A DNA stretch of 64,000 bases from Isurus oxyrinchus (GCA_026770705.1 JANJGN010000052.1:1240001-1304000); one strand, 5' to 3'. Positions 1,545 to 62,290 are shown, counted from the first letter of the stretch. The notes: a model not told the origin generated them from the letters alone. Program-made: numbers and translations.

Positions 1545-1913
1545 TTGGACTGTCACAAGAGTGGAAAGGTGACACTCCACGAGAGGTGACAGCACAGGAA
1601 GATTCGTGTGTACAGATTCCATGTCATTACAGTTATCCATCACATTTGGAAAGCCGACCACGAGTCGGAGTCTGGTTTAATAACGAGAAACAGATTCCCT
1701 GGGCTCCCATAGCCTTTCACTCCAAGGATCACAGTCACGAGTTACCACGGTTCCACCATCGGACCCGGCTGTCTGGAGACCTGAAAGATGGCGACTGTTC
1801 CCTGATTATAAACAACATCAGACGGGAAGATGCAGGACCTTATTTTTTCAGGATAGAATTTGACAATGGTCCGAGCCATAACTATTACCCTGTAACCCAG
1901 CTTCATGTTTCTG
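1545..1913 (+). CDS. Siglec gene A, V-set (sialic-acid-binding) Ig exon
   Basis: ccag|TT GGA ... TCT G|gtaagt, phase 1/1. Siglec signature CVQIPCHYSYP...W...RTRLSGDLKDGDCSLII...DAGPYFFRIE with the essential F-strand Arg and the Siglec-type Cys layout. Leader exon not found in window. Confidence 0.9.
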
Positions 1914-2313: not shown

Positions 2314-2610
2314 ATTTCACAGATAAACCCATGATATTCCCTGCTGAAATTATTGCAGGAAAGCGTGTGGATGTAAGCTGCACCTTCAACACAACGTGCA
2401 ATGGAACAGCAGCACCTGTCTTAACCTGGGACATTCCCACTGACGTACCTGGATCAGTCTCAAACACTGTAACTCAGCATGGTGTCACTCTGACCTATAC
2501 TTCTGTTCTGACCCTGACCCCATCACTCAAACACCACGGACACACTCTCAGCTGCAGAGTGAGATATCCATCTGTTTCATCGGAGCGGACCCTCGTACTA
2601 ACTGTACAAG
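2314..2610 (+). CDS. Siglec gene A, C2-set Ig exon 1
   Basis: gttag|AT TTC...CAA G|gtaagt, phase 1/1; VSCTFNTTCNG (extra interdomain Cys)...LTW...LSCRV. Confidence 0.9.
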
Positions 2611-2814
2611 GTAAGTATGGACATCCTTCATTATACATTCGCTGGAACAGTCTAGATTATGCACAGCAGGATCCCACAGAAAGGTATTCTGATGAGAACC
2701 AGATCATCTGTAATTTACGGAAAAACACTGACCAGAAAACAGTTAATGACAGTTTCTGAACATTAACACTGGAGCTTTTTTTTCCAGCCAAGAAGCTGAT
2801 AGAGCAGAGCATCA

Positions 2815-3620
2815 CTCACAATATACTAACCTCCTGACAATGCAGCACTCCCTCAGTACTGACCGCCTGACAGTGCAGCACTCCCTCAGTACTGATCCTT
2901 CAATAGTGCAGCAATCACTCAGTACTGACCCTCCAACAGTGCAGAACTCCCTCAGTACTGACCCTCTGACAGTGCAGCACTCCCTCAGTACTGACCTGCT
3001 GAAATTGCAGCACTCCCTCAGTACTGACCCTCTGACAGTGCAGCACTGCCTCAGTACTGACCCTCCAATAATGAAACAATCCCTCAGTACTGACTCTCCG
3101 ACAGTGCAGCACTCCTTCACTGCTGACCCTCCAACTCTGCAGTGCTCCCTCAGGACTGAAAATCCAACATTTCATATCTCCCTCCTGACTGACCCTCTGA
3201 AATTACAGCAGATCCTCGGTCGAGACCTTCAAACAGTGCAGCACTTCCACAGAACTGAATCTACCCCCCACCCACAGTGCAGCACTTCCACAGTACTGTA
3301 CCTCTGACAGTGCAGCACTCCCTCAGTACTGATCCTCCCACCTGCAGCACTCCCTCAGTACTGACCCTCCCACATGCAGCACTCCCTCAGTACTGACCCT
3401 CCCACAGTGCAGCACTCCCTCAGTACTGACCCTCCCACAGTGCAGCACTCCCTCAGTACTGACCCTCCCACAGTGCAGCACTCCCTCAGTACTGACCCTC
3501 CCACATGCAGCACTCCCTCAGTACTGACCCTCCCACAGTGCAGCACTCCCTCAGTACTGACCCTCCCACATGCAGCACTCCCTCAGTACTGACCCTTTGA
3601 CAGTGCTGCACTACCTCACT
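2815..3620 (+). repeat. 30-bp tandem repeat CAGTGCAGCACTCCCTCAGTACTGACCCTC
   Basis: Directly visible; other arrays at 4510-4975, 12645-12895, 19340-19890, 26425-26660, 28830-29175, 57410-57630, 60445-60800 and inverted at 39550-39660, 41540-41940. Confidence 0.95.
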
Positions 3621-3629
3621 ATTGGCTTT

Positions 3630-4510
3630 AAACTAAATAGAGTGTGGGGCGAATGTTTCTGGAGAAGGTATATGTACAGTTACAAACCAAAAGGATTTAT
3701 TAGCATTGCAGGATAGCTGTTTTGGCAATGATACCCAGTGTGTGACAGGAAGGGACACAGTGTCCAAACATAAAAATACATCAGCAAATAGTGTCAGAGG
3801 GGGGGAAATGATAAAAAGTCAAAATTAATGGCTCTTTACTTAAATGCACATAGTATTTGGAATGCTGACCTTTATTTCAAAGGGAATGGAGTATAAAAAT
3901 AGGGAAGTCTTGCTAAAACTATGCATGGCACTAGTTAGACCACACCTAGAATACTGTGAGCAGTTTTGGTTCCCTTATCTAAGGAAAGATGTACTGGCAT
4001 TGGAGGCAGTCCAGAGAAGGTTCACTAGGTTGATCCCAGTAATGGAGGGATTTTCATATGAGGAGAGGTTGAGTAGGATGGGCCTGTACTCATTGGAGTT
4101 TAGGAGAATGAGAGCTGACCTTATTGAAACATATAAGATTCTTAGGGTGCTTGACAGGGTAGATGCTGAGAGGTTGTTTCCCCTTGTGGGAGAGTCTAGG
4201 ACCAGAGGGCATAATCTCAGAGTAAGGGGTCACCCATTTAAGACAGAGATGAGGAGTTTCTTCTCTCAGAGGGTAGTGAATGTGTGGAATTCTTTACTGC
4301 AGAGAGCTGCAGAGGCTGGGTCATTAATTATATTCAAGGCTGAGATACACAGTTTTTTAATCAGTCAGGGAATCAAAGGCTATGGGGAAGAGGCAGGAAA
4401 GTGGAGTTGAGGATTGTCAGATCAGCCATGGTGTCATTGAATGGCGGAGCATAGTTGATTGGCCGAATGGCCTCCTTCTGCTCTGACGGCTTGTGGTCTT
4501 ATGGTCTTAT
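3630..4510 (+). mobile_element. CR1-clade LINE 3' end
   Basis: ORF2 C-terminus LVRPHLEYC...QRRFTRLIP...FFSQRVVNVWNSL; ends in a short (cttatggt)-like tail. Confidence 0.9.
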
Positions 4511-5096
4511 CACCCTCCAACAGTGCAGAGCTCCCTAATTACTGACCCTCCGACAGTGCAGCACTCTTCCAGTACTGACCCTTCGACAGTGCAGCATTGC
4601 CTCAGTACTGACCCTCCAACAGTGCAGAGATCCCTAATTACTGACGCTCCGACAATGCAGCACTCTTCCAGTACTGACTCTCCGACAGTGCAGCATTCCC
4701 TATGTACTGACCCTCCAACAGTGCAGCACTGCCTCAATACTGACCCTCCAACAGTGCAGCACTGCCTCAATACTGACCCTCCAACAGTGCAGCACTCCCT
4801 CAGTGCTGACCCTCCGACAGTGAAGTACTCGCTCAGTACTGACTATGCGGCAGTGAAGCTTTCACAGTACCCACCCACCATCAGTACAGCAGGTCCTCAG
4901 TACTCACCCTCCAACAGGGCAGCACTCCCTCAGTACTGACCCTCCAACAGTGCAGCACTCCCTCAGTACTGAACTGAAGAGTCTGCCTGAATTATGTGCT
5001 TTGTGGTGAAGGATTGATATTACACCTGTAACATTGTCAGGGTCTCTGAAAGTGCTTCACAGTCAATGTAAGTAACTGATCTTTATTTGTTTTTAG

Positions 5097-5363
5097 ATGC
5101 ACCACAGAATCTCTCAATTACTTTTCATGATATGATTAACGCTTCATGGATCAATATAATTGAGGGGAATTCTGCAGTGATAATCTGCTCTGTCGAGAGC
5201 TTCCCAGCTTCTAACCTGATGTGGCGACATCTTAATGTCCCAATGAACAGAACAAGTTCCAACAATGAGCTGTGGTTGGTGATTCCTCACGTTATATCCA
5301 GGGACACTGGAGATTATCAGTGTGTGGCAGAGAATGAACATGGAGCAGTGGACGGGTTCATAA
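5097..5363 (+). pseudogene. Siglec gene A, C2-set Ig exon 2, 3' end and donor replaced by a LINE
   Basis: ttttag|AT GCA CCA...IICSVESFPASNLMW...DTGDYQCVAENEHG. Homology to the paralogous exon (which ends ITITVE|gtgagt at 16098) stops at about 5363, where LINE sequence starts. Confidence 0.8.
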
Positions 5364-6420
5364 ACATTCTGTTTTTATTAGCTCATGGGATGTGGGTAGT
5401 GTTGACAAGACCAGAAATGATTGCCCATCTGTAACTGCCCCTTGAGAAGGTGGTGGTGAGCTGCCTTCTTTAACCACTGCAGTCCATGTGGTGTACGCAC
5501 ACCCACAGTGCTGTTAGGGAGGGAGTTCCAGGATTTTGTCCCAGTGATGGTGAAGGAACGGCCGATATATTTCCAAGTCCCAGGGCAGACCACCACCTCA
5601 AGTTCGCTTCCAAATCACACACCACACTGACTTGGAACTGTCTTGGTGGAAGAGGTTAAGGGTTTGGAAGGTGCTGTCGAAGGAACCTTTGTGAGTTGCT
5701 GCAGTGCATCTTGTAGATGGTGCACACTGCTGCCACTGTGTGCCAGTGGTGGAGGGTATGAACGTTTATGCTGGTGGATGGGCTGTCGATCAAACAAGCT
5801 GCTCCTGGATGGTGTCGAGCTTCTTGAGTGTTGTTGGAGCTGCACTTATCCAGCCAAGTGGAGATTATTCCATCACACTCCTGAAATGTGCCTTGTCCGA
5901 TGGTGGACAGGCTTTGGGGAGTCAGGAGGTGAGTTACTCACCACAGAGTTCCCAGCCTCTTACCCGCATTTGTAGCCACATTATTTCCTGTTGCCGGGAT
6001 GTTGCCAGGGCCAATAGTCTTTGCTGTATCCAGTATCATCAGCTGATTCCTGATGTCACGTGGAGTCAATCGAATTGTCTGAAAGCTGACATCTGTGATG
6101 CTGGGACCCTCTGGAGGAGGCCGAGATGGAGCATCCACTCAGCACTTCTGGCTGAACATGGTTGCCAATGCTTCAGCCTTGTCGTTTGCACTGATGTGCT
6201 GAGCTCCCCCATCATTAAGGATGGGGATATTTGTGGAACATCCTCCTCCTGTTAGATCTTTAGTTGTCCATCACCATTCATGACTGGATGTGGCAGGACT
6301 GCAGAGCTTAGATCTGACCCGTTGGTTGTGGGATCGCTTTGCTCTGTCTATAGCATGTTATTTCCGCTGTTTGGTGTGTATGTAGTCCTGTGTGTCACCT
6401 CAGCAGCTTGGCACCTCTGT
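5364..6420 (-). mobile_element. CR1-clade LINE fragment interrupting gene A
   Basis: Same family as 21390-23355 and 54751-56848; typical 3' end. Confidence 0.8.
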
Positions 6421-6609
6421 TATATGTGAATCCTCCTTATAGAAACCTGCATGTACATGGATATTATCAATAAATATTACATAGATATATGTTATTTGTA
6501 TAGACCTTTCATGCATAGACAATATCACTTCACAAGTTCAGAATTACTACATGTACACAGGGAACCATTCTCAAACTGTACCGGAGTCATTCATTGGCTG
6601 ATTTTACAG

Positions 6610-6706
6610 GGCGAGATTCCAATGAATGGAAAGCAGGATTGCTTGGAGCTGGAATCTGTTTGAGTGTTGGACTGAGTGGATTCTTCATCTTCAAGTGTGT
6701 GAGAAA
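6610..6706 (+). CDS. Siglec gene A transmembrane exon (no charge in core)
   Basis: ttttacag|GG...AGA AA|gtaagt, 97 nt: RDSNEWKAGLLGAGICLSVGLSGFFIFKCVRK; same length, phases and splice context as gene C TM exon 62194-62290. Confidence 0.8.
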
Positions 6707-7274
6707 GTAAGTGTGAAGGTTTAATTGGTTGTTTTTGAACATGTTTTCTTCAACCTTCTCTCCTTATAGAAAGAACTTGCATTTCTATAGCACCTTTCTC
6801 AACCGAAAACCCTTCACAACCCCTGAAGAGCTTTGATGTTCACTCATTGTTTAACATCTCATCCAACACTCAATGTTTCACAACTCAGTCCTGTAACAGG
6901 CAGTGTTGATCTGGACCATAAAATACCTTGTGACTTCCTGAGGATGTGAAAGGGGATATATAAATGAAGACATTTCTTTTGTTAGTGAATGCAATCTCTT
7001 TCCATTTTCAGTGTCTAACTCACTCTCTCTCTTACCTCCACTAATGCTCTCCTTCTCATTCTCTCTCTCTCTTATTCGCTCTCTCCCCAATCTCCACTAA
7101 TGCTCTCCTTCTCATTCTCTCTCTCGTCCTCTTACACGTTGTTCAGTCTCTCACAATTTTAAGGAGCGCTGAGCAACATCTGCTCCATCAGAAGATACAC
7201 CTCAACACCTGGAGTGAGCAGTGAATTGAAACTCGCTCAACGACTGTTCAGCTTTCCACAGGAATCACGACACA

Positions 7275-7665
7275 CTCAGGACACAAAGGGTTAACAGTTT
7301 GCTTACAACACAACACTAAGGCCCTACGTTTCAGTGAAAGGGTTTTCACAATTGTTCCCCAATTCCTGATTTGACTCACAGTGACACATCAACCCTTTCT
7401 CATTAAATACACAGAGGGAGCAGCACAGGAAGAGGTCATTCAGCCCAAGCAGAGCGTGTGGGCAGTTCCTCCCCAGGCGAGCATTCGGAAAGGTCCTGGG
7501 TAAGTAACGGAACGATTGGAATTCACTTCCACAACCAACACCATCCTTTGTTGATGTTGTGACTTTATAAAGACTGATTCCAATGATTGATGCCTTTGAA
7601 AGATTTCTACTGATTATTGAGATCTGGGTGTGAGACTCAAGTCTGTTGTACAGAACATCTTTCTG
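7275..7665 (+). promoter_or_regulatory. Displaced copy of Siglec promoter + non-coding exon 1 inside gene A
   Basis: Near-identical to 10840-11210 and 13060-13420; donor GG|gtaagt at 7500. Confidence 0.55.
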
Positions 7666-7679
7666 GGTAAATTGTGCAG

Positions 7680-7940
7680 ACAGGTTACACACAGTCTACG
7701 ATTATATTCCCTCAGGTCTAGGAGATTAAGGAGGGATCTAACTGAGAGATTCAAACTGATTAAACACTCGATAGGGTCGATAGAGAGAAGCTATTCCCTC
7801 GGGTGGGGGTGGTTGGTGGGGGTCGGGTGGAGTCCAGAACAAGGGGGCCGGAACTTCAGATTGGAGCCAGGCCATTCAGGGGTGATGTCAGGAAGCACTT
7901 CTTCACACAAAGGGGAGTGGAAATCTGGAACTGTCTCCCC
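7680..7940 (+). mobile_element. CR1 LINE fragment
   Basis: RRLRRDL...KHFFTQRGVEIWNCLP; related pieces at 53200-53720 (-) and about 63530-63615. Confidence 0.75.
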
Positions 7941-8010
7941 AATAATCAAACCCAACACCGAATACACATCATGTTGATTGTCACACTGTCCATTTCCATC
8001 TCTATTACAG

Positions 8011-8115
8011 AAGAGAGGCGAGGGGAAAGCAGGAATCAAATCGAACCATCATGTTGATGAATATCGAGGTCCTGTTTATGAAAACTGTGAGCGTGGTTGG
8101 GCTTTGAGGAATCAG
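8011..8115 (+). CDS. Siglec gene A cytoplasmic exon with YENC motif
   Basis: ctattacag|AAG...CAG|gttagt phase 0/0: KRGEGKAGIKSNHHVDEYRGPVYENCERGWALRNQ. Confidence 0.6.
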
Positions 8116-8249
8116 GTTAGTCACACACCACAGGATCCCCAGCCTCTCAGCTGCTCCAGTAGCCTGGTTATTGATATGGCTGCTCCAGTCCTGTATCTGC
8201 AATGTTTTATACAGTCACTCCCAAACCCAACCAAACTCACACCCAACAC

Positions 8250-8530
8250 CATTCAGTATCAATAATCAAACCCCGTTCAGTATCAATAATCAAACCCCGT
8301 TCAGAATCAATAATCAAACACTGTTCAGAATCAATAATCAAACCCCGTTCAGAATCAATTATCAAAACCTGTTCAGAATCAATAATCAAACTCCGTTCAG
8401 AATCAATAATCAAACCCTCTTCAGAATCAATAATCAAACCCCGTTCAGAATCAATAATCAAACTCCGTTCAGTATCAATAATCAAACCCCGTTCAGAATC
8501 AATAATCAAACCCTGTTCAGTGTCAATAAC
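8250..8530 (+). repeat. 24-bp minisatellite TCAGAATCAATAATCAAACCCCGT
   Basis: About 11-12 tandem units in the last intron of gene A. Confidence 0.95.
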
Positions 8531-8628
8531 TAATGTATCTATTGTGGGTGGAATTTTCAATTTGGATCAATAATACTAAACACTGATCACTCTGATTGTC
8601 ACTCTGATCATTTCTGTTTCTATTACAG

Positions 8629-8745
8629 AAGAAAGATGAGAAGGATCTGGAAATGAAATCTAACCGCGGAGTCAGTCCTGATACAGATGATGATCTTTAC
8701 GCAAACTGTGATTTTGCCAAGGATTCTGTTTATGGGAATTTATAA
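8629..8745 (+). CDS. Siglec gene A terminal cytoplasmic exon with ITIM (SVYGNL)
   Basis: ctattacag|KKDEKDLEMKSNRGVSPDTDDDLYANCDFAKDSVYGNL*; acceptor context paralogous to the 8011 exon. Confidence 0.7.
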   Translation, partial: KKDEKDLEMKSNRGVSPDTDDDLYANCDFAKDSVYGNL

Positions 8746-9864
8746 ACTGAGCAAGAATGAGACACACACAGTGTGGGGAGAATACAGAACGGGAGAATCA
8801 TTCAAAACTCCAATTTACCTTCCTAATATCCACAGGAACTCACTCCCAGGAAATAGATTTAAACCTCTTGATACAATCTGATGGAATTTCTTTGGAATGA
8901 TCTATCCAGGATGATTGTCTGTGGGTTTCAATTCGAACATCCTCCTTCAGAATTGTCCCTCCCTGTTGGAAACATCCTTCTCTCCATTCTGATTGTAAAT
9001 ATCTTTAGATATCGTTCGATGATGTACCAGGACAGAACGGACAAATTCAATCCCGTGTCCTTGATTATGAGTTAATTTTCATTCTGTTATTCACCTTCCT
9101 GTCTGTCAGTGTTTACAGAATATTCATCAGCCAGTGTAGACTTCAGGAAATGCAGGATCGGTGGATAATTGGAGCAGAGGAGATTGGCATAATTTACTCA
9201 GCATTTTGTAATCAAATGTATTTTCAGATATATATTTGGATTTTACACTTCATCGTTAAACAGCAAAACTAACTGCAATCCCAGAAACAGGGAAACAATT
9301 TGTTTGGAGATTTGAGAAATTCTCTGCAGCTCAGAGGATAACAGATGTGCTACAGTGCCACCACTGGTGGGAGGACATCATTTCAGCGTGACATGTTTAC
9401 ATTGATGTTGCCAATGAACATTGGAAATTATGATGTGAAAAATTGGTTGCAGGTTTATCTTCTTCAATATGTCATTGGATGGATGAGACAGCTTTGATAA
9501 CAGAATGAAATAGAGCTGCAATAAACCACCATTTTAGTCTTTCACACTTGGAGAGTACAATTTGCATCCATCCTGATGGTGAGTGGATGGGTGGACTGTT
9601 CGATCTGTTACAGATTACAGAGACCAACATCCTTGATCCTGGTTCTGCTCTATGTTTGATGACATTCTTGGATAAAAGATTGGGAAAATAAATAATCCTC
9701 CTGCATTGATCTGTAACTGGTCTCTCCATCTGTCAATGTCCTGAGGACAGAATTGGGTTTGAGGTCCAAATCATACACATGCTTTGACTGCCCATTGAAT
9801 AGGAACAGGAGGAGGCCATTCAGCCCCCTCGAACCTGCTACACAGGAACAAGAGAGTACCTGAA

Positions 9865-10065
9865 ATAAAAACAGAAAATGCTGGAGAAACTGAGTAGGTC
9901 TGGCAGCATCTGTGCAGAGATAAACAGAATTAGCATTTCGAGTCCGTATGACCCTTCTTCAGAGTCTCAAAGCAAAAACTCTGTTTCTCTCTTCACAGCT
10001 GCTGCCAGACCTGCTGAGTTAAGGCAGCATTTTCCGTTTTTATTTAAGATTTACACCATCTGCAA
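9865..10065. mobile_element. Short hairpin-type (Penelope-terminus-like) repeat
   Basis: aaatgctggagaaactgagtaggtctggcagc ... gctgccagacctgctgagtt inverted arms; related copies at about 14935-15075, 19895-19990, 26935-27085, 36200-36285. Confidence 0.55.
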
Positions 10066-10079
10066 TATTTATTTTTAAT

Positions 10080-10800
10080 GAGAGGAGGACATTCAGCCCC
10101 TCGACCCTGTTACGCAGGAACAGGAGGAGGCCATTCAGCCCACTCAAGCCTGTTACACAGGAACAGGAGGAGGCCATTCAGCCCCATAAGCCTGTTATAC
10201 AGGAAAAGGAGGAGGCCATTCAGCCCCTCAAGCCTGTTACACAGGAACAGGAGGAGGCCCATTCAGCCCCTCCAGCCTGTTACACAGCAACAGGAGGAGG
10301 CCCATTCAGCCCCTCGAGCCTGTTACACAGCAACAGGAGGAGGCCCATTCAGCCCCTCAAGCCTGTTACACAGGAACAGGAGGAGGCCCATTCAGCCCCT
10401 CGAGCCTGTTACACAGGAACAGGAGGAGGCCCATTCAGACCTTCAAGCCTCTAACACCAGAACGGAAGGAGGTCATTTCAGCCCCATGAGCTTGATGAAC
10501 AGGAACAGGAGGAGGTCCATTAAGCCCCTCAAGTCAGTTACATAGGAACAGGAGAAGTCTCATTCAACCACACGAGCATCTTATATAAGAACATGAGGGG
10601 GCCCAAACAGCCCCTCAAGCATGTTACACAAGAAGCGGAGGAGGATGTTCATTCAGTCCCTCGAGGCAATTATAAAGGAACAGGAGGAGGCCCATTCAGC
10701 CACACAAGCCTCTTACACAAGAACAGGAGGAGGTCCATTCAGCCCCTCAAGCCTGTTACACAGGAACAGGAGGAGGCCCGTTCAACCCCCTCGAGCTTGT
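10080..10800 (+). repeat. 42-43-bp minisatellite ACACAGGAACAGGAGGAGGCCATTCAGCCCCTCAAGCCTGTT (inverted copy 33715-33950)
   Basis: Tandem units resembling CR1 3' end sequence. Confidence 0.9.
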
Positions 10801-10839
10801 TGCATGTGAACAGTCGATGGCCCTTCAGCCACATTCTTG

Positions 10840-12650
10840 GCACGCAAAGGGTTAACAGTTTTCTAACTGTGCGAGGCAAAGAGCTGCTTTCTCACTTGGT
10901 ACTAACCACTTCCTCATTTTGTCTCACAGTGACACATCAACCCTTTCTAATTCAACACACAGAGGGAGCAGCACAGGAAGAGGTCATTCAGCCCAAGCAG
11001 AGCGGGTGGGCAGTTCCTCCCCAGGCGAGCAGTCGGACAGGTCCTGGGTAAGTAACGGAACGATTGGAATTCACTTCCACGACCAACACCGTCCTTTGTT
11101 GATGTTGTGACTTTATAAAGACAGATTCCAATGATTGATGCCTTTGAAAGATTTCTACTGATTATTGAGATCTGGGTGTGAGACTCAAGTCTGTTGTACA
11201 GAACATCTTTCTAGCTCAAGGGATGAGGGAAGAGCAGGGACATGAGCTTTGGGGTGTCCTAAGCAGGTGAAAGGCGATATAGAAATGCAAGTCCTTCATT
11301 GTTTTACTTTCTTAAAGCCTTGTAACAATCTGCAGAGCACCTATCATCCCACAGAGAATGAAATTAGTCTCTGAAGACATTGTCTAAAAGCAGTTCTGAT
11401 CTCTCGAGAGGTGTCGGACAAGAGGTGAGGTCTCATTAACTCATTTCTCTTTCACAGCTTGAGAACCAATGAAATACCTGGGAGTGGACAATGATCAGGA
11501 AATCTTACTTCCTCCTGTCACTTCTCCAAGGTAATATCATTGTCAGCTCGGACAGATTTATGGCTAATCATCTTTGTAAAACATAATTCTTATTGAGCTC
11601 TGATTGGGAACAGATTCAGCAGTGAGCCAGTGTACAAACTCACACCAAGTCCCATTCACCCATCACCCCTGTGCTCACTGATATACACTGACTCCCTGTC
11701 TGACAGCAGAATTGGAGGAGACCAGGGGACTTTGAGGTTTGCATGGTTGGAGGAGAAAGTGATTGGAGAAGAGGAATGGAGGGAATGGAAATTGAGGATG
11801 AGAGTCTTAAACTCGAGGCTCTGCTGGACTGGGAGCCAGTGCAGGTCAGCGAGTGGCAGAGGGTGTGAGGTGTCGAGTCGAGAAACAGTGATAAATACTG
11901 GGGGATGAAGTCTATCCTGATGCTTGGACTCCGATAGCAAAGGAATGAAATTTGTGTCTTTTCCTGATTTTAATCAGAATTTCCCATGAAGACAACACAG
12001 CAGCTCCTAGAATAGACAGGCTGTTCAGTGTCACACTTCCTGTCCATTCTCACCTTGCTAGAAACTTCAATAAGGGAGCAAGATAACTGAAAGAGAGAAG
12101 GAAGGTAAAGCTGTCCGTGTGTAAAGGTGTCAATATTCAGTTTGCATATTTGTCTTTCTCTCGACACATGCAGAGCTCAGGCTAGAGGCACTTTGTTAGT
12201 GTGTTTCACAGTCTCTGCTGGAGTAGGGTCAGTGCTGAGCTTGGGGACAAGTCAGTCTACAATGCTGCATCGGAATCAACAATACAACAATATGGGGTTT
12301 GGATCAGAAATAATCCCTTAGACAATGAGGATCCAAAGAGATTCCTTAGACAATGAGGATCCAAAGAGATTCCTTAAACAATGAGGATCCAAAAAGATTC
12401 CTTAGACAATGAGGATCCAAAGAGAATCCTCAGACAATGAGGATCCAAAGAGATTACTTAAATAATGAGGATCCAAAGAGATTCCTCAGACAATGAACAT
12501 ACAAAGTGCACCAATCAGATTGAATCAGATTAGCCATTCAGCTGTGTTGAAGAGCAGACAGGAATGTTAGGCTAATTAGTGATTCATGACGGTGATAATG
12601 GGGGGAGTTCTGAGGGCTCCTAATCCATTGTCCTGTCTTGTAAATCAGCA
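10840..12650 (+). pseudogene. Orphan Siglec 5' fragment: promoter, non-coding exon (donor 11048), leader exon 11458-11530, part of intron
   Basis: PU.1-like CACTTCCTCATTTT 10907-10920; ATG 11491 MIRKSYFLLSLLQ G|gtaat; 12163-12650 duplicates 450-935; no V exon follows. Confidence 0.7.
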
Positions 12651-13705
12651 CCTTAATACTGACCCTCCAACAGTGCAGCACTCCCTCAGTACTGACCCTC
12701 CAACATTGCAGCACTCCCTCAGTACTGATCCTCCAGCATTGCAGCACTCCCTGATTAATGTCCCTCTGACAGTGCAGCACTCCCTCAGTACTGACCCTGA
12801 AACAGTGGAGATCTCCCTCAGTACTGACCTTACAATAGTGCAACACTCGCTCAGTAATGACCATCCGACAGTGCAGCGCTTGCTCAGTACTGACACTGGG
12901 GAGTTTCAGTCTACTCTGTGGGGCAGACGTCCCCTGAATCGGGTCTTGAATCCCACAACATTCTGACCCCCTGAATTTGGCTGTGAAACCCACTGACCCA
13001 CAGGAGAAACTCCTGGTCAATGACTGTCCACCTGTGAGCAGAAATATCACCACAGGGTCAGGACACAAAGTTCACCAACATCTCAAAACATGAGCTGCTC
13101 TGTCACTTTGATCCAACTTCCTCATTTTGTCTCACAGAGACACATCAACCCTTTCTCACTAAATACACAGAGGGGGCAGCACAGGAAGAGGTCATTCAGC
13201 CCAAGCAGAGCGTGTGGGCAGTTCCTCCCCAGGCGAGCAGTCGGACAGGTCCTGGGTAAGTAACGGAACGATTGGAATTCACTTCCACGACCAACACCGT
13301 CCTTTGTTGATGTTGTGACTTTATAAAGACAGATTCCAATGATTGATGCCTTTGAAAGATTTCTACTGGTTATTGACATCTGGATGTGAGTCTCAGGTCT
13401 GTTGTACAGAACATCTTTCTAGCTCAAGGGATGAGGGAAGTGCAGAGACATGAGCTTTGGGGCATCCTGAGGAGGTGAAAGGTGCTATAGAAATGCAAAT
13501 CCTTCATTGATTTTCTTTCTTAAAGCCTTGTAACTCTCTGCAGAGCACCTATCATCCCACAGAGAATCAAATTCTTCTGTGAAGATATTGTCTAAAAGCT
13601 GTTCTGATCTCTTGAAAGCTGTCGGACAATAGGTGAAGTCTCATTAACTCCTTTCTCTTTCACAGCTTGAGAGTGAGAAGTGGATGGACTATCTGGGAGT
13701 GGACA

Positions 13706-13745
13706 ATGATCGGGAAATCTTACTTCCTCCTGTCACTTCTCCAAG
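13706..13745 (+). CDS. Siglec gene B leader exon (coding part)
   Basis: Acceptor ttcacag at 13665; MIGKSYFLLSLLQ G|gtaat, phase 1; upstream non-coding exon donor at 13256 and PU.1-like ACTTCCTCATTTT at 13116-13128. Confidence 0.75.
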
Positions 13746-14435
13746 GTAATATCATCGTCAGTATGGACAGATTTATGTTTAACAGTTTTTGTAAAAGATC
13801 ATTCTTATCTCTTTATCTCTGTAACGTCCTGCAACTCAACCAAACAACTTCCCAGATCTCTGTGTTACTCCAATTCCGGCCTCTTGACCATCCCCCGATT
13901 CCCATCACTCCAATAGTGGCGGCCGTGCCTTCAGCTGCCTGGGGCCTGAGCTCTGGAATTCACTCCCTAAACCTCGGCGATGGAGGAGATCAGAGGGTTT
14001 CATTTTACTGAGAATCACCACGACCACATCACAGCTGCAGTCAGAATAGACAGAGAGTCCAGCCCTCACACTTCCTGCACAGTTTCACCATAGCAACCAC
14101 AATAAGGAAGTAAAATAACTGAAAGTTAAACCGAAGCCAAACCAGTCGGTGTAGAGAGATGAGATGTTTACACAGTTTCCCTGTGTATCTTGTAGACACT
14201 GTGTTGGGTGGAAGACTGGCTTCAGTAAACAGAGTCCTGAGGACCATGAGCCAATGTAGAATGAACTTGTCCACTCCTGTGTCCAGGATTCTCTTCCATC
14301 CATTGTGAAACCTTGGGGACTTCCTTGTGTGTCCTGTAGATGGTCCTCACTGCAGCCACTGTGCCCCAGTGATGGAGGGGGTGGATATCGAGTCTAGTGG
14401 ATTGACAAACCATCCAGAGTTAAATATTGATATTT

Positions 14436-14467
14436 ATATTACCCTGTAACCCGGCTTCACGGTTCTG
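14436..14467 (+). pseudogene. Siglec gene B V-set exon remnant (about 348 bp deleted)
   Basis: Flanks align to gene A 1288-1534 and 1883-2110; acceptor and nearly the whole V exon are missing, donor at 14468 retained. Confidence 0.85.
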
Positions 14468-15326
14468 GTAAGTGCTGCGTTATAATTACTCAACAATTCA
14501 CATCCAACACTCAATGGGAAATAACACTAACTGTGACGTTTACATATTAACACAAAACACAGCTTATTATAACACACTGTCTGATTCTCAATAACCTGGT
14601 GATCGCTTCCAGTTCAGTCCTAAAGCAACCTCTAATACTCACTTTAATATCAATGATGAAAAGCATTAACTGTATTATCAGGTTATCCATTCCCATCAAT
14701 CTCTCCTGTCCTGTTTAAAAGTCTGACGTATCGATAAAAGAAAGATGTGCATTTCTGCTGCGCAATTTACCACCTCAGGAGGATCCAAATCCCTTCACAG
14801 CCAATGAAATTATTCCTGAATTGTAGTCACAGATGTTAAACACAGCAGGCAGTTTGTGCACAGCAAGATCCAACAAACCACAAGGTGATAAATCACCCAG
14901 ATCACTGAGGAAATGAGAAGCCAGTGAACTCAAACCTCTGGTCTGATGAAGAGTCATACGGACTCGAAACGTTAACCCTGTCTTCCTCTCCACTGATACT
15001 GTCAGACCTGCTGAGTCTTTCCAGCAATTTTTGTTTTGGTTTCAGATTTCCAGCATCCGCAGTATTCTGCTTTTAACTCCAATCTCTGGTCTGAGCCTCT
15101 TCTCTCATCCAGTGTTCTCAATTCACATGTCTCGGAGTGAACGTGTATTAAGCTGAGAGACAGAAACACTACTGCCAAAGAGCAAGAAAATCTTTCCTGA
15201 TCATTGTAACCTCTCAGTTCTGATATCATCCTTGTAAAAGTGCTTTCTCTTGTGGGACTGTGATTTCTATTTGAACTGATGGTTCACGTTATATTTCTCT
15301 AAAAGGATCCATTCTCTGTCTGTTAG

Positions 15327-15623
15327 ATTTCACAGATAAACCCATGATATTCCCTGCTGAAATTATTGCAGGAAAGCGTGTGGATGTAAGCTGCACCTTC
15401 AACACAACGTGCAATGGAACAGCAGCACCTGTCTTAACCTGGGACACTCCCACTGACGTACCTGGATCAGTCTCAAACACTGTAACTCAGCATGGTGTCA
15501 CTCTGACCTATACTTGTGTTGTGACCCTGATTCCATCACTCAAACACCACGGACACACTCTCAGCTGCAGAGTGAGATATCCATCTGTTTCATCGGAGCG
15601 GACCCTCGTACTAACTGTGCAAG
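15327..15623 (+). CDS. Siglec gene B C2-set exon 1 (intact)
   Basis: 297 nt, about 6 substitutions versus gene A 2314-2610; AG/GT intact, phase 1/1. Confidence 0.85.
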
Positions 15624-15945
15624 GTAATTACATACACTTTCATTCTACATCAGCACTCCCTCAGCGCTGACCCTCTGACAGTGCAGCCCGTTCTCAGTAT
15701 CCACATTCTCAGACCTCTCTAAGTGCTTCAAAGTCGATAGAAGTTAATTGATCTTTATTTGATTATTGCTGAATGAAGAGACAAGCTGTCTAAACTTTAC
15801 ATCTCGCACACACCATTCTCCATGGCAACACCTCCACCTATCAGAGACCACTTGCCAACCAATCAGCACTCTCTTCCCATTAAGTATAAATTGTTGTTCA
15901 CTTTCTGTTGGTAATCCTGTGAACGGGCTTCTTGATTCCTGCCCT

Positions 15946-16098
15946 GACATCTTAATGTCCCAATGAACAGAACAACTTCCAACAATGAGCTGTGGTTAGT
16001 GATTCCTCACATTACATCCAGGGACACTGGAGACTATCAGTGTGTGGCAGAGAATGAACATGGAGCAGTGGAGGGATTCATAACCATCACTGTGGAAC
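15946..16098 (+). pseudogene. Siglec gene B C2-set exon 2, 5' half and acceptor replaced by a ~185-bp insert
   Basis: HLNVPMNRTTSNNELWLVIPHITSRDTGDYQCVAENEHGAVEGFITITVE|gtgagt; homology to gene A breaks at about 15761-15945. Confidence 0.8.
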
Positions 16099-17776
16099 GT
16101 GAGTGTACACAGACTTCAACATCTCTCGCAGATTCGAACACGACACAAACACCCTCAAACATACACATCTAAGTAGACACATGCAGACACACATATATGA
16201 CCACACAGAAAGACACACTCACACACAAACACACTAACACACACTCCCCTGTGGGCTACCTGACCTCCCTCAGTACTGCCCTGGAGAGTTGGCCTGAATT
16301 CTGGGATTTGTGTTCCCATTCATATTTATGCAAGAATATGGAAATTACAAAGTCTATTACAGACAGTCAGATGCATAGAGACACTCACAGATACTCTCTG
16401 CCTCTCCAACTCTCTCTCTCCCTTTAAGAAGCTTCCTGAAAGCTCACCCTTCGAACAATCACCGGTCCCAAATCCTCCTTATCTGATTTGTGTGATTTTC
16501 TTTGTGTATTTGAGAGTAAGCGAGAGGTGGAGAGGTTTAGGAGGAGAATTCCTGTTGGTGAAAAGCTTACATCATGTTCTCACCTTTCCAGTGCCCATAT
16601 TTTACATGATGTCCAATGTCCTTGTTCATAATGGGAATTGCCTATGTAAACATCACGCTGTAGTTACAGTCTCCTACCAGTGGTGGCATTGTAGCACTTA
16701 ATCCTTGTGTTTCCCAGCTTTTCAAGCAACTCCACTTCCCAGTTTGCTCCACAAGCTGTGAGTTCATTGGAATTCAATTATTTCTCAAACGGTAGATTTG
16801 ATGTCATTTTATTGAAAACTTCCTCAGTGCCTCCCTGAAGGGTTGACACTCTCTGGGAAGCAGGAATAGGCTGGATGTTGGGGAGTTCATCTTTTCCCAA
16901 AGAGTAGTGATCCTCGGGAATGTGCTGTCAGTGGGTGTGGTGGTTGCTGATTCTCTGTCGCCTTCAAGAGGGATCTGGAGTGGTTACTGACTGGGGGAGA
17001 GATCATGGAAACGGAGAATGATACAGCACAGGAGGAGGCCATTCAGTCCATTGTGCCTGTGCCAGGTCTTTCAATGTTCTATCCAATCAGATCCAATAAC
17101 CACCATTCCAATTTGCCACCATCTTCCTCCTTTAAGTATTTATCCAATTTCCCTTTTGAAAGTTCCTATTGAATCTGCTTCCACCGCCCTTTCAGGCAGC
17201 ACCTTCCAGATCACAACAACTCGCTCTGTCAAAACAAATTCTCCTCATCTCCCCCTTCGGTTCGTCAATCTGTGTCCCTCTGGTTACCGAGCCTCCTGCC
17301 CCTTAAGTACATTGATACTGTTCACCTCAACCACTCCCTGTGGGAGCGAGTTCCACATTCTCCCCTCTCTCTGGGTAAAGATTGGAACTGTTTATTAAGT
17401 GAGGCCTGTAAGTCCGTGGGGGAGTCCATCTCGATCCTGCCCGATTCGTACACGCGTCCGAGATGGATTTCCACCCTGCACTAAACGTTTCCAGAATTTT
17501 CTACAGCACAATCCTGTACACAACGATTGGGAGAAACATTGGACAGGGAGTCCAACAGCACAATGATCCATTCTCACCAATGTTCCACGCTAAGGGGAAA
17601 GTTCCGATTGTCCACTCTTAGAGTGTTTACAATGAAAACATTCATTCCACATTGAATCCCAGTGGATGGGTCAATATTACAACAAATGTTGCAGTGATAT
17701 GAAGCTTGATTGTTCAGCCAGAGTGAGAGATTGAAAGCGGAGAGTCAGTGATGATTTCTTTCTGTGTGTTCTCTAG

Positions 17777-17916
17777 ACAGTGGAGGAGAGATTCTGCACG
17801 TGATCCTGATCCTGGGAATACGAGCTGTGATATTCCTTGTGGCTGTGGTTATCACTATCGCTGGAGTCTGTGTCTGGGAGAGACAAACAGTGAAAGCAAG
17901 TCGACAGACTGTTTGA
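17777..17916 (+). CDS. Siglec gene B transmembrane exon, activating type (Arg in TM, short Tyr-free tail)
   Basis: ctctag|AC AGT GGA...: SGGEILHVILILGIRAVIFLVAVVITIAGVCVWERQTVKASRQTV*; CGA (Arg) at 17821-17823; phase 1 matches upstream Ig exons. Confidence 0.8.
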
Positions 17917-18019
17917 AGCTTTGTACAGCAACAATCTGATCAGTCAGTGCGGACAAATAACGTGTGATGTTGGGTTAAGTTGTAATGAAACTGGTCAGTG
18001 TCCTGGTTAGAATCACCTT

Positions 18020-18640
18020 CGTATCAGAGAGGCATTCCAGCACAGTGGGAGCCCATTCAGCCCATTGAGTCCATGCTGTCTCTCTGTAGAGCAATACAGT
18101 CAGTCCCATTTCCCCCGCTCTATCCCCGTATCCCTGCAAGTTTATTTCCCCTCAAGTGTCCAACCAATTTCCTTTTGAAATCGTTCGTCTCCGCTTCCAC
18201 CATCCTCGTAGGCAGCGAGTTCCAGCTCATTACCACTCGCTGTGTAAAAAAGTTACTCCTCACATCCCCCCTCTGCCCAAAACCTTCAATCTGTGTCCCC
18301 CAGTCCTTGTCCCATCAGCTAATGGCAACAGCTTCTCTTTGTCTGCCTTATCTAAACCCATCATCATCTTGTACACCTCGATCAGATCCCCCCTCAATCT
18401 CCTTTGCTCCAAGGAGAACAACCCCAGCTTCTCCAACCCAACCTTGTAGCTAAAATCCCTCATCCCTGGACCCATTCTGCTCAATCTCCTCCCCACCCTC
18501 TCAAGGACCCTCACTTCCTTCCCAAAGTGAGGAGACCAGAACTGGACACAATACTCTAGTTGTCACCTAAACAGAGCTTTATAAATGTTCAGCATAACCT
18601 CCCTGTGTTTGTACTCAATCCCTCGATTTATGAAAAGCTT
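18020..18640 (-). mobile_element. CR1 LINE 3' fragment
   Basis: LEKLGLFSLEQRRLRGDLIEVYK motif. Confidence 0.85.
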
Positions 18641-19035: not shown

Positions 19036-21389
19036 TGTTCTGTAGATATTTAAAGATTAAAATTCTTGTTTTGCTGCAAAATACTTGGCTCAAAGACATT
19101 ACTTCATATTGTCATGTTTTCCAATCAGATGAATTCCTCTGTCCATCTTTATAATAGAAATTTCCAATGTAAACATGTCACATTGTAGCTGCACACACTT
19201 GCCAGTGGCTGGTGTGATATCAAAGCTGTCTTGCTGTCGAGAAACAGCGAGAAATATTCCTGTTGTGTGCATGAACTTCATGTTAGCATGAGACACAGGC
19301 ATCAGATACAATTTTGTGCAATTTGTACAATGTTCTTTAGACAGCGGAGCACTCCCTCAGTACTGACCCTCCAACAGTGCTGCACTCCCTCAGTTCAGAC
19401 CCTCCTACAGTGCAGCACTCCCTCAGATCAGACCCTCCGACAATGCAGCACTCCCTCAGTTCAAACCCTCCGACAGTGCAGCACTCCCTCAGTTCAGACC
19501 CTCCGACTTTGCAGCACTCCCTCAGTTCAAACCCTCAGACAGTGCAGCACTCCCTCAGTTCAGAACCTCCGACAGTGCAGCACTCTCTCAGTTCAGACCC
19601 TCCGACAGTGCAGCCCTCCCTCATTTCAGACCCTCCGACAGTGCAGCACTCCCTCAGTTCAGGCCTCCGACAGTGCAGCACTCCTTCAGTTCAGACCCTC
19701 CGACAGTGCAGCACTCCCTCAGTTCAAACCATCCGACAGTGCAGCACTCCCTCAGTTCAAACCCTCCGACAGTGCAGCTCTCCCTCAGTTCAGAGCCTCC
19801 GACAGTGCAGCACTCCCTCAGTTCAGACCCTCCGACAGTGCAGCACTCCCTCAGTACTGAACCTCCGACAGTGCCGCACTACCTCAGTACTTCTCTGCCG
19901 ATGCTGCCAGACCTGCTGAGTTTTTCCAGGTATTTCTGTTTCTGTTTCTGTTTTGGATTTCCAGCATCTGCAGTTTTTTTGCTTTTAGTGCTGGGCAGTT
20001 CCTCAGCAAGGATTCGGGCCACAAAACATTGCGAGTGCTGTGGATCTGCGCCACGATTTAGAGAGCTGTGCTTGGCATGCCTATTCTAGTCCCAGTCCAG
20101 TGTGGTGGGGACAGCCTGGCAGTCCTGGGTTGGTGGTGCCCAGCATGGTGTGAGTGACGTGGTCAGTCCCTCACACACGTCGGTCCTGGGGGTGGGTGGC
20201 TTGATACTAGGCCGCAGGTGGCACAATCCCAGTCAGGGGAGGCATCTGCAGCCTGTCAGTGGGGAGCAGGTAATATAGAGAGTAGGGGTGGGGGTGGGAA
20301 TCGAGGGGGGCCGGTGGTCTCTGTAAGTCACAGTACAATGGGCCTCTAGTTGGAGAGAGGTCAGGTCTACATGGGGCATTGGGATGTCAACATCAGACAG
20401 TCTAGGGAGGAGGACTGGGATGTCAACCCCGAACACAATAAGATCAAGGATTAGAGAGGAAGGGAGGAGACTGATTGGAAGGAGGGGAATGTGCACATTA
20501 TGCTCCTCCAGCACGATGGGAGGGACTGTGATGGTTACGGGGGTGGGGGGGGTGAAGTGGGAGGGGATAGACGCTTACCTGGTGGTATTGCCTCAGCCTC
20601 ACCCTTTTTCAAGCTGATCCAATGTCGCAGTTGAAGAATAAGCTACAAAACAAATTGGCAGGGGAGGTCTCCCAGGGCCTGTGGGAGACATCACCCACTG
20701 CATCTTTGGCCTGTTTGAAGGGGCACCCGAACAATTCCGGCTTTTCCAAATGATGAGGAAGACACAGCTGCACCCCGAGTCCCCTACTGGGGATCCAGAA
20801 GGTTGCAATAGCGCTGCGAGGGACTCATGGGCTCCACAGTGACTCCCTAATTAGCGACTGGAAGGTTTATGTTCATTTATCTTTATTATCCGTTCATATT
20901 GAGCAATGGAGCTCCTGATCTGACACCTTTCTGTACCTCGTCCAATGCTTCTGTTATCAGGACTTCCACATCGATGTGAAAGAGCCATGATGATAGCAGA
21001 CAGTCGCACAATGGGAATGGCACTAGGCCAGTGATCCAGAGGCCCAGGTGAATGCTTTGGAGGTACGGGTTCAAATCCCACCACGGCAGCTGGAGGAATT
21101 TAGATTCGATTAATCAATAAATTTAATTGATTGATACATTTTTTTCTTATTCATTTCAGGGATGTTGGTGTCGCTGACTAGGCCAGTATTTGTTGCCCAT
21201 CCCCATTTGCCTTTGAGAACATATGGATATCTGAGTTAGGATCAGGAGTAGGTCACTCAGTCCCTCGAACCTGCTCCGCCATTCAGTAAGATCATGGCTG
21301 ATCTGATTGTCACCTCAACCTCACATTCCTGCCTACCCCCAATGACCTTTCACCCCATTGTTAATCAAGAATCTATCTAGCTCTGTGGA

Positions 21390-62193: not shown

Positions 62194-62290
62194 TTTCTCA
62201 CACAGATGAAGATGAAGATTCCAGCCAGGAAAACACTCAACATGATCCCAGCCGTGAACAATCCTACTGTCCATTTACTGGAGTCTCTAC
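62194..62290 (-). CDS. Siglec gene C transmembrane exon (neutral)
   Basis: ttttacag|GT AGA...AGA AA|gtaagt: GRDSSKWTVGLFTAGIMLSVFLAGIFIFICVRK, phase 1/2. Confidence 0.88.

What the first reader, a model, noticed from the sequence alone, without database searches (positions are those of the whole stretch)
2314..17916. Paired activating/inhibitory Siglec receptors
Seen: genes A and B share a C2 exon with about 6 differences in 297 nt and near-identical adjacent intron segments. A continues to a neutral TM and a Tyr-motif tail (SVYGNL ITIM). B continues to an unrelated TM with Arg (ILILGIRAVIFLV) and a 12-aa Tyr-free tail. Known: this is the design of mammalian Siglec-5/14 and Siglec-11/16, where gene conversion homogenises ectodomains and a charged TM recruits DAP12; LILRA/OSCAR-type receptors use a similar Arg for FcR-gamma. 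Inference: an independent paired-Siglec system exists, or recently existed, in sharks.
Basis: partly seen in the sequence, partly recalled or inferred. Interest (0 to 1): 0.85.

Follow-up and report, generated by a model that had tools for sequence, protein, structure and literature searches.

The report
Decayed shark activating/inhibitory Siglec gene pair
Two neighbouring shark immune-sensor genes of the Siglec type share a recent duplicate front half but end in a "brake" tail and an "accelerator" membrane anchor; the anchor exon is real and conserved across sharks and rays, but this accelerator copy has lost its sugar-binding exon.

Summary
The two C2 exons (2314-2610, 15327-15623) differ at 6 of 297 bases. 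Gene A runs on to a neutral membrane segment and a tail ending SVYGNL. Copy B runs on to ILILGIRAVIFLV and a 12-residue tyrosine-free tail.

- **Family level: yes.** The arginine membrane exon ends 15 database gene models from 8 shark and ray species, with the arginine invariant. RNA contigs of three runs splice a C2a-type exon to it.
- **This window: not a working pair.** B lacks its V-set (sugar-binding) exon and the first half of its next Ig exon. A repeat insertion has removed the splice donor of A's third Ig exon.
- **RNA does not show B itself expressed.** The contigs carry the letters of a close paralog or ortholog, not B's.
- **Gene conversion is not shown.** The whole 5' unit is a 90-96% duplicate; the exon, at 98%, is only slightly more alike.
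- **The adaptor is unknown.**

B is most likely a decaying activating copy, much like human SIGLEC16P.

This scan has already reported paired Siglec clusters many times on other DNA of this genome, and automatic annotation predicts them in many sharks. I found no paper describing them.

The parts
1545..1913 (+). Gene A, V-set exon (phase 1-1) with CVQIPC, DCSLII and YFFRIE
   Evidence: Pfam V-set and Ig_CD22 above cut-off. Best solved relatives are human Siglec-5, -7 and -8; YFFR aligns with their essential Arg.
2314..2610 (+). Gene A, first C2 exon (C2a), 297 nt
   Evidence: Pfam C2-set_2. 6/297 differences to B.
5097..5371 (+). Gene A, second C2 exon (C2b); last codons and donor missing
   Evidence: Homology to B and to Cetorhinus P0025 (...GFITITVE) ends at 5371. 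No phase-1 donor before the stop.
5372..6270 (.). Dispersed repeat that replaces the 3' end of A's C2b exon
   Evidence: Other copies at 54766-55349, 62024-61604, 59452-59035, 21385-21600 and 23061-23343.
6610..6706 (+). Gene A, neutral TM exon (phase 1 to 2)
   Evidence: Translation. 94-97% identical to TM of Cetorhinus P0025 and Carcharodon P0040.
7415..7499 (+). Gene A, cytoplasmic exon cy0 (K-GSSTGRGHSAQAERVGSSSPGEHSERSW), phase 2 to 0
   Evidence: Matches ...KWSSTGRGHSAQAERVGSSTSGEQSDKSW of P0025. An RNA loose end joins a cy0-type donor to the start of cy1.
8011..8115 (+). Gene A, cytoplasmic exon cy1 (…DEYRGPVYENCERGWALRNQ)
   Evidence: 86% identical to P0025 residues 391-425.
8629..8745 (+). 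Gene A, last exon (…DDLYANCDFAKDSVYGNL, stop); SVYGNL fits the ITIM pattern and all three Tyr are YxN
   Evidence: Translation. 79% identical to the P0025 C-terminus.
10963..11530 (+). Module copy 1: cy0-like exon (10963-11047) and leader exon (11458-11530, MIRKSYFLLSLLQ)
   Evidence: 90-96% duplicate of 13092-13808. tblastn of the leader.
12162..12651 (+). Left end of the A/B duplicated unit (matches 448-937 at 95.7%)
13171..13255 (+). Module copy 2: cy0-like exon used as a 5' exon
   Evidence: GT..AG joint 13255 to 13666 in X1, X5 and X6.
13666..13745 (+). Copy B, leader exon (ATG 13706, MIGKSYFLLSLLQ, phase 1)
   Evidence: Identical to the leader of Carcharodon, Cetorhinus and Scyliorhinus models.
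14435..14467 (+). Copy B, junction of the roughly 348-bp deletion that removed the V exon, with the 31-nt V remnant and its donor
   Evidence: 1288-1534 maps to 14189-14435 and 1883-2176 to 14437-14720. tblastn finds only 10 residues of V here.
14721..15192 (.). Insertion specific to B in the V-C2a intron
   Evidence: Absent between A 2176 and 2180.
15327..15623 (+). Copy B, C2a exon; open frame, intact acceptor and donor
15946..16098 (+). Copy B, 3' half of the C2b exon with its donor; the 5' half and acceptor are missing
   Evidence: Homology to A 5226-5371 only. An RNA contig of an intact relative diverges exactly at 15946 (loose ends).
17777..17916 (+). Arg-TM terminal coding exon (phase 1): SGGEILHVILILGIRAVIFLVAVVITIAGVCVWERQTVKASRQTV, stop
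   Evidence: Joint 15623 to 17777 in three runs. 10 library hits and 15 models in total end in this exon.

Best explanation
The stretch is part of a fast-evolving shark Siglec-like gene cluster.

**Gene A** is an inhibitory-type member: V-set, C2a, C2b, neutral TM, then three cytoplasmic exons carrying YENC, LYANC and SVYGNL. A repeat insertion has removed the donor of its C2b exon. A membrane form would therefore need to skip that exon, which is in frame.

**Copy B** arose by a recent tandem duplication, or unequal exchange, of the 5' unit. That unit runs from an upstream segment to C2b and is about 5% diverged. It was placed in front of an old, conserved terminal exon that encodes a membrane helix with a buried arginine and a 12-residue tail. 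In intact relatives this exon follows C2a (leader-V-C2a-ArgTM). By analogy with all known receptors of this design, it docks an ITAM adaptor that has a membrane aspartate (DAP12, FcR-gamma or a CD3-zeta-like chain).

B later lost its V exon and half of C2b through two deletions. At best it encodes a ligand-blind leader-C2a-ArgTM protein. Most likely it is a decaying activating partner.

**Shown:** the exon anatomy, the duplication, the deletions, conservation of the Arg exon, and its splicing in close relatives.

**Inferred:** adaptor docking, the activating function, and that B is non-functional.
For: - **Anatomy and frames:**
- **Duplication profile:** 90-96% in non-coding parts and 98% in C2a.
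- **V deletion:** at 14435/14437, with no other + strand V exon in the window.
- **Siglec identity of A's V domain:** Pfam above cut-off; closest solved chains are Siglec-5, -7 and -8, with YFFR aligned to their essential Arg.
- **A's tail model:** confirmed exon by exon by Cetorhinus maximus P0025.
- **Arg exon conserved:** 10 significant hits in 1.84 billion representatives, all at a C-terminus except P0011 (a multi-stretch match I did not examine) and one evident chimera (P0012). They carry names from Scyliorhinus, Chiloscyllium, Hemiscyllium, Rhincodon and Mustelus. More models come from S. canicula, Carcharodon and a ray, Hypanus. I, L, R and F are invariant in the alignment.
- **Splicing:** C2a to ArgTM with GT..AG in X1, X5 and X6, and not in the DNA-like X17.
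- **Tail type is scattered** on the C2a and V trees.
Against: - The three remaining coding exons of B keep open frames, good splice sites and compatible phases. RefSeq already holds V-less models in Carcharodon (P0097, P0098). A functional V-less product is therefore not excluded.
- RNA attribution to this locus failed. All contigs read non-B letters at 15516, 15521, 15532 and 17897. This may only reflect that the runs come from other individuals or species.
- No adaptor was examined.
- The V deletion rests on this assembly alone.
Confidence: 0.68

Rival explanations
1. B is a functional V-less receptor. Leader-C2a-ArgTM would be made and would act without binding sialic acid, for example as an adaptor sink, a chaperone, or a partner of other Siglecs. 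Human CD33 isoforms that lack the V-set domain are a comparable case.
For: - Leader (phase 1), C2a (1-1) and ArgTM (1) are in frame with intact splice sites.
- C2a diverged less than the flanks.
- V-less RefSeq models begin MIGKSYFLLSLLQ-DFTDKP (P0097, P0098).
- X1 contigs cover B-specific intron and insertion sequence at 97-99.6% identity (table 8).
Against: - Two independent exon-removing deletions.
- 5 of the 6 exon differences are nonsynonymous, including a new unpaired Cys.
- No contig carries B's diagnostic letters.
- The signal peptide loses the part normally encoded by the V exon.
Confidence: 0.2
2. A and B are a working ligand-sharing pair. Either the missing V exon is an assembly artefact, or B borrows a V exon from elsewhere.
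For: - DNA-like run X17 has contigs that leave the window at 14435 and run into an intact V exon (loose ends).
- Intact relatives with 92-95% identical V domains exist.
Against: - The V sequence in those X17 contigs (CTGAACCCTCACAAG...) differs from A's and fits another paralog.
- The pre-V intron and the V remnant are contiguous in the window.
- No other + strand V exon was found.
- The C2b truncation is a second, independent lesion.
Confidence: 0.05
3. The high similarity of the ectodomain exons is kept up by gene conversion between old activating and inhibitory genes, as in SIGLEC5/14 and SIGLEC11/16, and not by one recent duplication.
For: - C2a is 2.0% diverged against 5.4% in the non-coding flanks.
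- The Arg exon is older than the shark-ray split, while the 5' units are about 95% alike.
- Tail type is scattered on the ectodomain trees.
Against: - There is no sharp tract. Introns and an upstream segment share the 4-6% divergence, and the C2b half is 8% diverged.
- The exon changes are mostly nonsynonymous.
- The trees have few columns and most forks are unresolved.
- Duplication with tail swapping gives the same picture.
Confidence: 0.3

Closest known systems
Human SIGLEC11 / SIGLEC16 (and its null allele SIGLEC16P), PMC5701461
   Same: Neighbouring genes share an upstream region and 5' exons. One has an inhibitory tail; the other has a charged TM and a short tail. The activating partner is often non-functional through a lesion in the V-set exon.
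   Different: - The shark TM has Arg in ILGIRA, not the Lys of Siglec-16.
- Here the whole V exon is deleted; SIGLEC16P has a 4-bp deletion.
- Conversion tracts are shown in primates but not here.
- DAP12 binding is shown in humans but untested here.
Human Siglec-5 / Siglec-14 paired receptors, PMC4042635
   Same: ITIM tail against an Arg-containing TM. The first Ig domains are almost identical. A's V domain has Siglec-5 as its closest solved relative.
   Different: In this window only the second Ig domain is shared, and B has no ligand-binding domain. Judging by the trees, the shark family is a lineage-specific expansion, not an ortholog.
RefSeq models of elasmobranch Siglec-like genes, e.g. 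S. canicula XP models P0015/P0016, Carcharodon P0020/P0021/P0023 and Cetorhinus P0025
   Same: The same exons. P0015/16 are leader-V-C2a-ArgTM. P0025 is V-C2a-C2b-TM-cy0-cy1-cy2, like gene A. TM exon identity is 82-93% and C2a identity 93-97%.
   Different: These are intact. Window copy B lacks V and half of C2b, and gene A lacks the C2b donor.
Macaque activating KIR and KIR2DL4 (Arg in TM, FcR-gamma not DAP12), PMC8102735
   Same: Activating forms arise by recombination of an ectodomain with a TM/tail module that carries Arg.
   Different: A different Ig family. It shows that an Arg alone does not say which adaptor is used.
Skate and zebrafish MDIR families (named in PMC3031540)
   Same: Multigene activating/inhibitory Ig receptors already described in a cartilaginous fish.
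   Different: The ectodomains are CD300/TREM/pIgR-like V domains, not Siglec-type.

Membership tests
Siglec (I-type lectin) family | N-terminal V-set domain with the essential Arg on strand F (YFFR-x-E) | tested here: met
   Gene A only. YFFRIE aligns with YFFRVE of Siglec-5 and YFFRME of Siglec-7. Pfam V-set scores 44 bits and Ig_CD22 35 bits, both above cut-off. B has no V exon.
Siglec (I-type lectin) family | Siglec cysteine pattern: CxxxPC on strand B, Cys on strand E, and an extra Cys in the first C2 domain for the inter-domain bridge | tested here: met
   CVQIPC and DCSLII align with CVLVPC and NCSLSI of Siglec-5. C2a has three Cys (SCTF, TTCNG, LSCRV).
Siglec (I-type lectin) family | Binding of sialylated glycans | not testable with these tools
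   Needs a glycan array with an A ectodomain-Fc fusion.
CD33-related Siglec subfamily (orthology) | Membrane-proximal ITIM plus distal ITIM-like motif (TEYSEI type), and orthology to the mammalian cluster | tested here: inconclusive
   A's tail has YENC, LYANC and SVYGNL; only the last fits the ITIM pattern. The LLYANINF...TEYAQIRF tail type does exist in the family, and on the minus strand near 57118-57165. The best mammalian hit is only 33% identical. No orthology test was run.
Paired activating/inhibitory receptors of the Siglec-5/14 and 11/16 type | Both partners carry a near-identical ligand-binding V-set domain | tested here: not met
   B's V exon is deleted at 14435/14437. The feature is met elsewhere in the family: A's V is 95% identical to the V of the activating model P0020.
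Paired activating/inhibitory receptors of the Siglec-5/14 and 11/16 type | One partner has Tyr-motif tail; the other has a charged TM and a short Tyr-free tail | tested here: met
Paired activating/inhibitory receptors of the Siglec-5/14 and 11/16 type | Ectodomain similarity maintained by gene conversion | tested here: inconclusive
   Exon 2.0% against flanks 5.4% (p 0.013), with no tract boundary. The trees are scattered but poorly resolved.
Paired activating/inhibitory receptors of the Siglec-5/14 and 11/16 type | Both partners expressed (in the same cells) | tested here: inconclusive
   Junction contigs of both types exist, but they carry letters of paralogs or orthologs. No cell-type data.
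DAP12 / FcR-gamma-coupled receptors | Basic residue within the TM helix, conserved, with a short tail | tested here: met
   Arg is invariant in 16 sequences plus the window, from sharks and one ray.
DAP12 / FcR-gamma-coupled receptors | Physical association with the adaptor through that residue | not testable with these tools
   No shark adaptor sequence was in hand, and complex prediction was not run.

The most novel reading that the evidence does not exclude
One ancient Arg-TM exon (I-LGIRA-IF) may serve as a shared, shuffled activating cassette for at least four different elasmobranch Ig-receptor ectodomain families: Siglec/CD33-like, CD22-like, single-V sialoadhesin-like and SLAM-like. Deleted copies such as B would then be retained as ligand-blind regulators that compete for the adaptor.
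Probability: 0.25. Interest if true: 0.6.

Novelty: new member of a known kind. Interest (0 to 1): 0.4.

Why it matters
The published view, built on teleosts, is that fish have only Siglec-1, CD22, MAG and Siglec-15 and lack CD33-type inhibitory Siglecs (PMC7226832). Sharks and rays instead have large Siglec-like clusters with inhibitory tails and an arginine-anchor form. The brake-and-accelerator design therefore either arose independently or is much older than mammals.

This window adds a concrete case of turnover in such a cluster:
- a recent 5' duplication;
- a tail module older than the shark-ray split;
- loss of the ligand-binding exon in the activating copy, which parallels SIGLEC16P and the SIGLEC14 null allele in humans.

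The family is already predicted by automatic annotation, and this scan has reported it repeatedly, so this locus adds little beyond that.

Tried and rejected
- **Exon-length protein queries**. The search only sees proteins of similar length, so it gave three short models. The full family came from the representative search with the TM exon and from a full-length hit used as query.
- **Search restricted to the tail of P0004**. It found only three proteins.
- **Attributing the RNA junction to B.** Rejected. Contigs read C, C, T, C at 15516/15521/15531/15532, and G at 17897. In X5 and X6 they also read A at 17807 and G at 17881. This is the sequence of Carcharodon P0020/P0021 (VIQILGIRA...WEGQTVKGS), not B.
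- **Alternative donors for A's C2b exon.** No phase-1 GT occurs before the in-frame stop.
- **Alternative acceptor for B's C2b remnant.** The only nearby AG gives the wrong phase, and a TGA lies in frame just upstream.
- **Bacterial promoter/terminator scan of the 3' region**. Irrelevant for a vertebrate gene and not used.
- **Joined spliced models of A or B** were not sent to any search or fold tool.
- **Complex prediction** was not run, because no adaptor sequence was in hand and no binding claim rests on it.
- **N runs** (40798-41041, 43145-43279, 53278-53418) were left untouched.


Full report
**What is in the sequence**

The window is vertebrate DNA rich in dispersed repeats and 33-bp satellites. 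Gene A lies on the + strand between 1545 and 8745.

| Exon of gene A | Coordinates | Notes |
|---|---|---|
| V-set | 1545-1913 | |
| C2a | 2314-2610 | |
| C2b | 5097-5371 | 3' end and donor missing |
| TM | 6610-6706 | neutral |
| cy0 | 7415-7499 | |
| cy1 | 8011-8115 | ...PVYENC... |
| cy2 | 8629-8745 | ...DDLYANCDFAKDSVYGNL, stop |

The cy0 exon is needed for the frame, because the TM exon ends in phase 2 and cy1 is read in phase 0. The Cetorhinus maximus model P0025 has exactly this order...CVRK-WSSTGRGHSAQAERVGSS...SW-KRDDGKAGIKSNHRVDEYQGSVYENCERGWALRNQ-KKDEK...DDLYANCDLADDSVYGNV.

A's V domain passes the Pfam V-set and Ig_CD22 cut-offs. Its closest solved relatives are human Siglec-5, -7, -8, MAG, Siglec-10 and CD33. 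YFFRIE lies on the essential arginine of those proteins, and the Siglec cysteines are aligned.

**The duplicate**

A second copy of the 5' unit lies about 13 kb downstream.

| Segment | In A | In B | Identity or differences |
|---|---|---|---|
| Upstream segment | 448-937 | 12162-12651 | 95.7% |
| Intron before V | 1288-1534 | 14189-14435 | 94.7% |
| V-C2a intron, 5' part | 1883-2176 | 14437-14720 | about 90-94% |
| V-C2a intron, 3' part | 2180-2313 | 15193-15326 | 6/134 |
| C2a exon | 2314-2610 | 15327-15623 | 6/297 |
| C2b, 3' half | 5226-5371 | 15946-16091 | 12/146 |

Non-coding parts together differ at 62 of 1150 aligned sites (5.4%), against 2.0% in the exon (Fisher p 0.013). Five of the six changed bases alter the protein, giving four residue changes, one of them to Cys.

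This is the picture of one recent duplication of the whole unit. The C2a exon is somewhat more alike than its surroundings. It is not a sharp conversion tract.

**Lesions**

- **B's V exon is gone.** In B the sequence runs from the intron before V (14435) straight into the last 31 nt of the V exon (14437-14467) with its donor. About 348 bp, including the acceptor and nearly all of V, are missing. tblastn finds no other V exon on the + strand.
- **B's C2b is half gone.** The C2a-C2b intron is reduced to about 320 bp. C2b starts only at 15946, with an in-frame TGA just before and no usable acceptor. An RNA contig of an intact relative leaves the window exactly at 15946.
- **A's C2b has no donor.** Homology to B and to P0025 stops at 5371, four codons before the normal donor. 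A repeat with other copies in the window follows. No phase-1 donor precedes the stop.

Both genes can still give in-frame products by leaving C2b out, since all Ig exons are phase 1-1. B would then be leader-C2a-ArgTM without any lectin domain.

**The arginine exon**

Exon 17777-17916 follows a good acceptor (ttctgtgtgttctctag) in phase 1. It reads SGGEILHVILILGIRAVIFLVAVVITIAGVCVWERQTVKASRQTV, stop.

A search of 1.84 billion representatives gave 10 significant hits. All lie at the C-terminus of the hit, except P0011 (a multi-stretch match I did not look at) and one evident chimera, P0012. Their sources are RefSeq or GenBank models of six species:
- Scyliorhinus torazame
- Chiloscyllium punctatum
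- C. plagiosum
- Hemiscyllium ocellatum
- Rhincodon typus
- Mustelus asterias

Further searches added S. canicula, Carcharodon carcharias and a ray, Hypanus sabinus. In the alignment I, L, R and F are invariant, and ILGIRA is identical in all sharks.

The ectodomains differ. They are Siglec/CD33-like, CD22-like, a single sialoadhesin-like V, and SLAM-like. Some of these could be prediction chimeras. The CD22-like form, however, recurs in two species, and the SLAM-like form recurs in two species and two annotation pipelines.

S. canicula P0015 and P0016 (272-273 aa) are leader-V-C2a-ArgTM. This is the intact form of B.

**RNA**

Contigs of four runs were laid on 12500-18499. All four are Logan contigs and their RNA label is a guess.
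- The joint 15623>17777 (GT..AG) is present in X1, X5 and X6, from three studies and two coded organisms.
- It is absent from X17. That run behaves like DNA, because its contigs run from the pre-V intron into an intact V exon.

It cannot be assigned to B. Every contig reads C, C, T, C at 15516/15521/15531/15532, where B has G, G, T, T and A has C, C, C, C. Every contig also reads G at 17897. X5 and X6 additionally read A at 17807 and G at 17881. The result is exactly the Carcharodon P0020/P0021 tail, VIQILGIRA...WEGQTVKGS. The junction therefore comes from a close paralog or ortholog.

Other joints and loose ends:
- leader>V of the A type;
- V>C2a;
- cy0>cy1;
- a cy0-like exon (13171-13255) spliced to the leader exon.

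**Family picture**

Among the 105 proteins gathered, I classed tails by motif:
- 15 Arg-TM;
- 14 of A's YxN type;
- 15 of the LLYANINF...TEYAQIRF or LYAQLQ...TEYASI type;
- 4 skate models with a Lys at the TM start and a short tail.

On a C2a tree (90 rows, 97 columns) and a V tree (46 rows, 122 columns) the sequences group by taxon, not by tail. The Arg-TM label needs 8 changes for 9 rows on the C2a tree and 8 for 8 on the V tree, no fewer than shuffled labels. Resolution is low.

A's V domain is 95% identical to the V of the activating model P0020, but only 89% identical to that of P0025, its best tail relative. Ectodomains and tails are thus recombined within lineages. Conversion, or duplication with tail swapping, could both explain this.

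**Mechanism**

The family-level reading is that an Arg-TM exon older than the shark-ray split gives a Siglec-type ectodomain a docking site for an acidic-TM ITAM adaptor. Sister genes with almost the same ectodomain instead carry tyrosine tails. The Arg lies about 8-11 residues into the helix. That position is compatible with either DAP12-type or FcR-gamma-type partners. Macaque KIR show that an Arg alone does not decide (PMC8102735). This step is an inference.

For this window, B cannot sense sialic acid. It is most likely a decaying copy, as SIGLEC16P is in humans (PMC5701461). A V-less regulatory product is the main rival.

**Known or new**

- Paired Siglecs are described in primates (PMC4042635, PMC5701461).
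- A teleost study states that fish lack CD33-related Siglecs (PMC7226832).
- The whale shark genome paper only lists Siglecs among Ig families.
- Searches for Siglecs in sharks, elasmobranchs or cartilaginous fish found no description of such pairs.
- The models are nevertheless in RefSeq for many species.
- Earlier notes of this scan report the same design at many other places of this genome, including another Arg exon 33.5 kb upstream of this window. I treated those notes as leads only.

**Limits**

- Only one read-laying run was allowed.
- The species of the window was not established. It is a shark close to Carcharodon and Cetorhinus by identity.

Noticed in passing
window 7359-7664, 10906-11212, 13113-13420: Three 94-96% identical copies of a module contain an 85-nt exon. 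In gene A it is a coding cytoplasmic exon (7415-7499). In the other two copies it lies upstream of leader exons, and RNA contigs splice it to the leader (13255>13666). A 'goes back' joint, 13745>13171, suggests leader1 > cy0-like > leader2 transcripts.
   Followed up: partly
window 62193-62291 (-) and 57118-57165 (-): A second Siglec-like gene lies on the minus strand. Its TM is GRDSSKWTVGLFTAGIMLSVFLAGIFIFICVRK, and its tail carries PDELLYANINFSK. This is the classical ITIM tail type, nearly identical to Carcharodon P0098. Its Ig exons lie beyond the window end.
   Followed up: partly
window 35324-35575 (-): A divergent Siglec-like V-set exon (30% identical to A's V, CVVIPC motif) lies on the minus strand.
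   Followed up: no
window 45938-53201: A 7.3-kb array of a 12-nt unit (CCTCATCCCCCT, about 620 copies) with GC skew near -0.97. A second array, 36745-39236, has 70-72-nt CT/CA-rich units.
   Followed up: partly
P0058, P0061, P0064, P0068 (skates): Skate Siglec-like models end in ...SWKCIVALIVLAV...CCRNK. This is a short-tailed form with a Lys at the start of the TM helix, possibly a second activating-type module specific to skates.
   Followed up: no
window 8011-8115 and 8629-8745: All three tyrosines of A's tail sit in YxN (YENC, YANC, YGNL), the Grb2-SH2 binding pattern. The two exons and their flanks (7954-8047 against 8572-8665, 70% identical) are an old tandem duplicate, separated by a 24-nt satellite (8197-8577).
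   Followed up: no
P0097, P0098 (Carcharodon carcharias): These RefSeq models join the leader directly to C2a, with no V-set domain. One of them has a full inhibitory tail, so V-less products or V-deleted genes are not unique to this window.
   Followed up: partly
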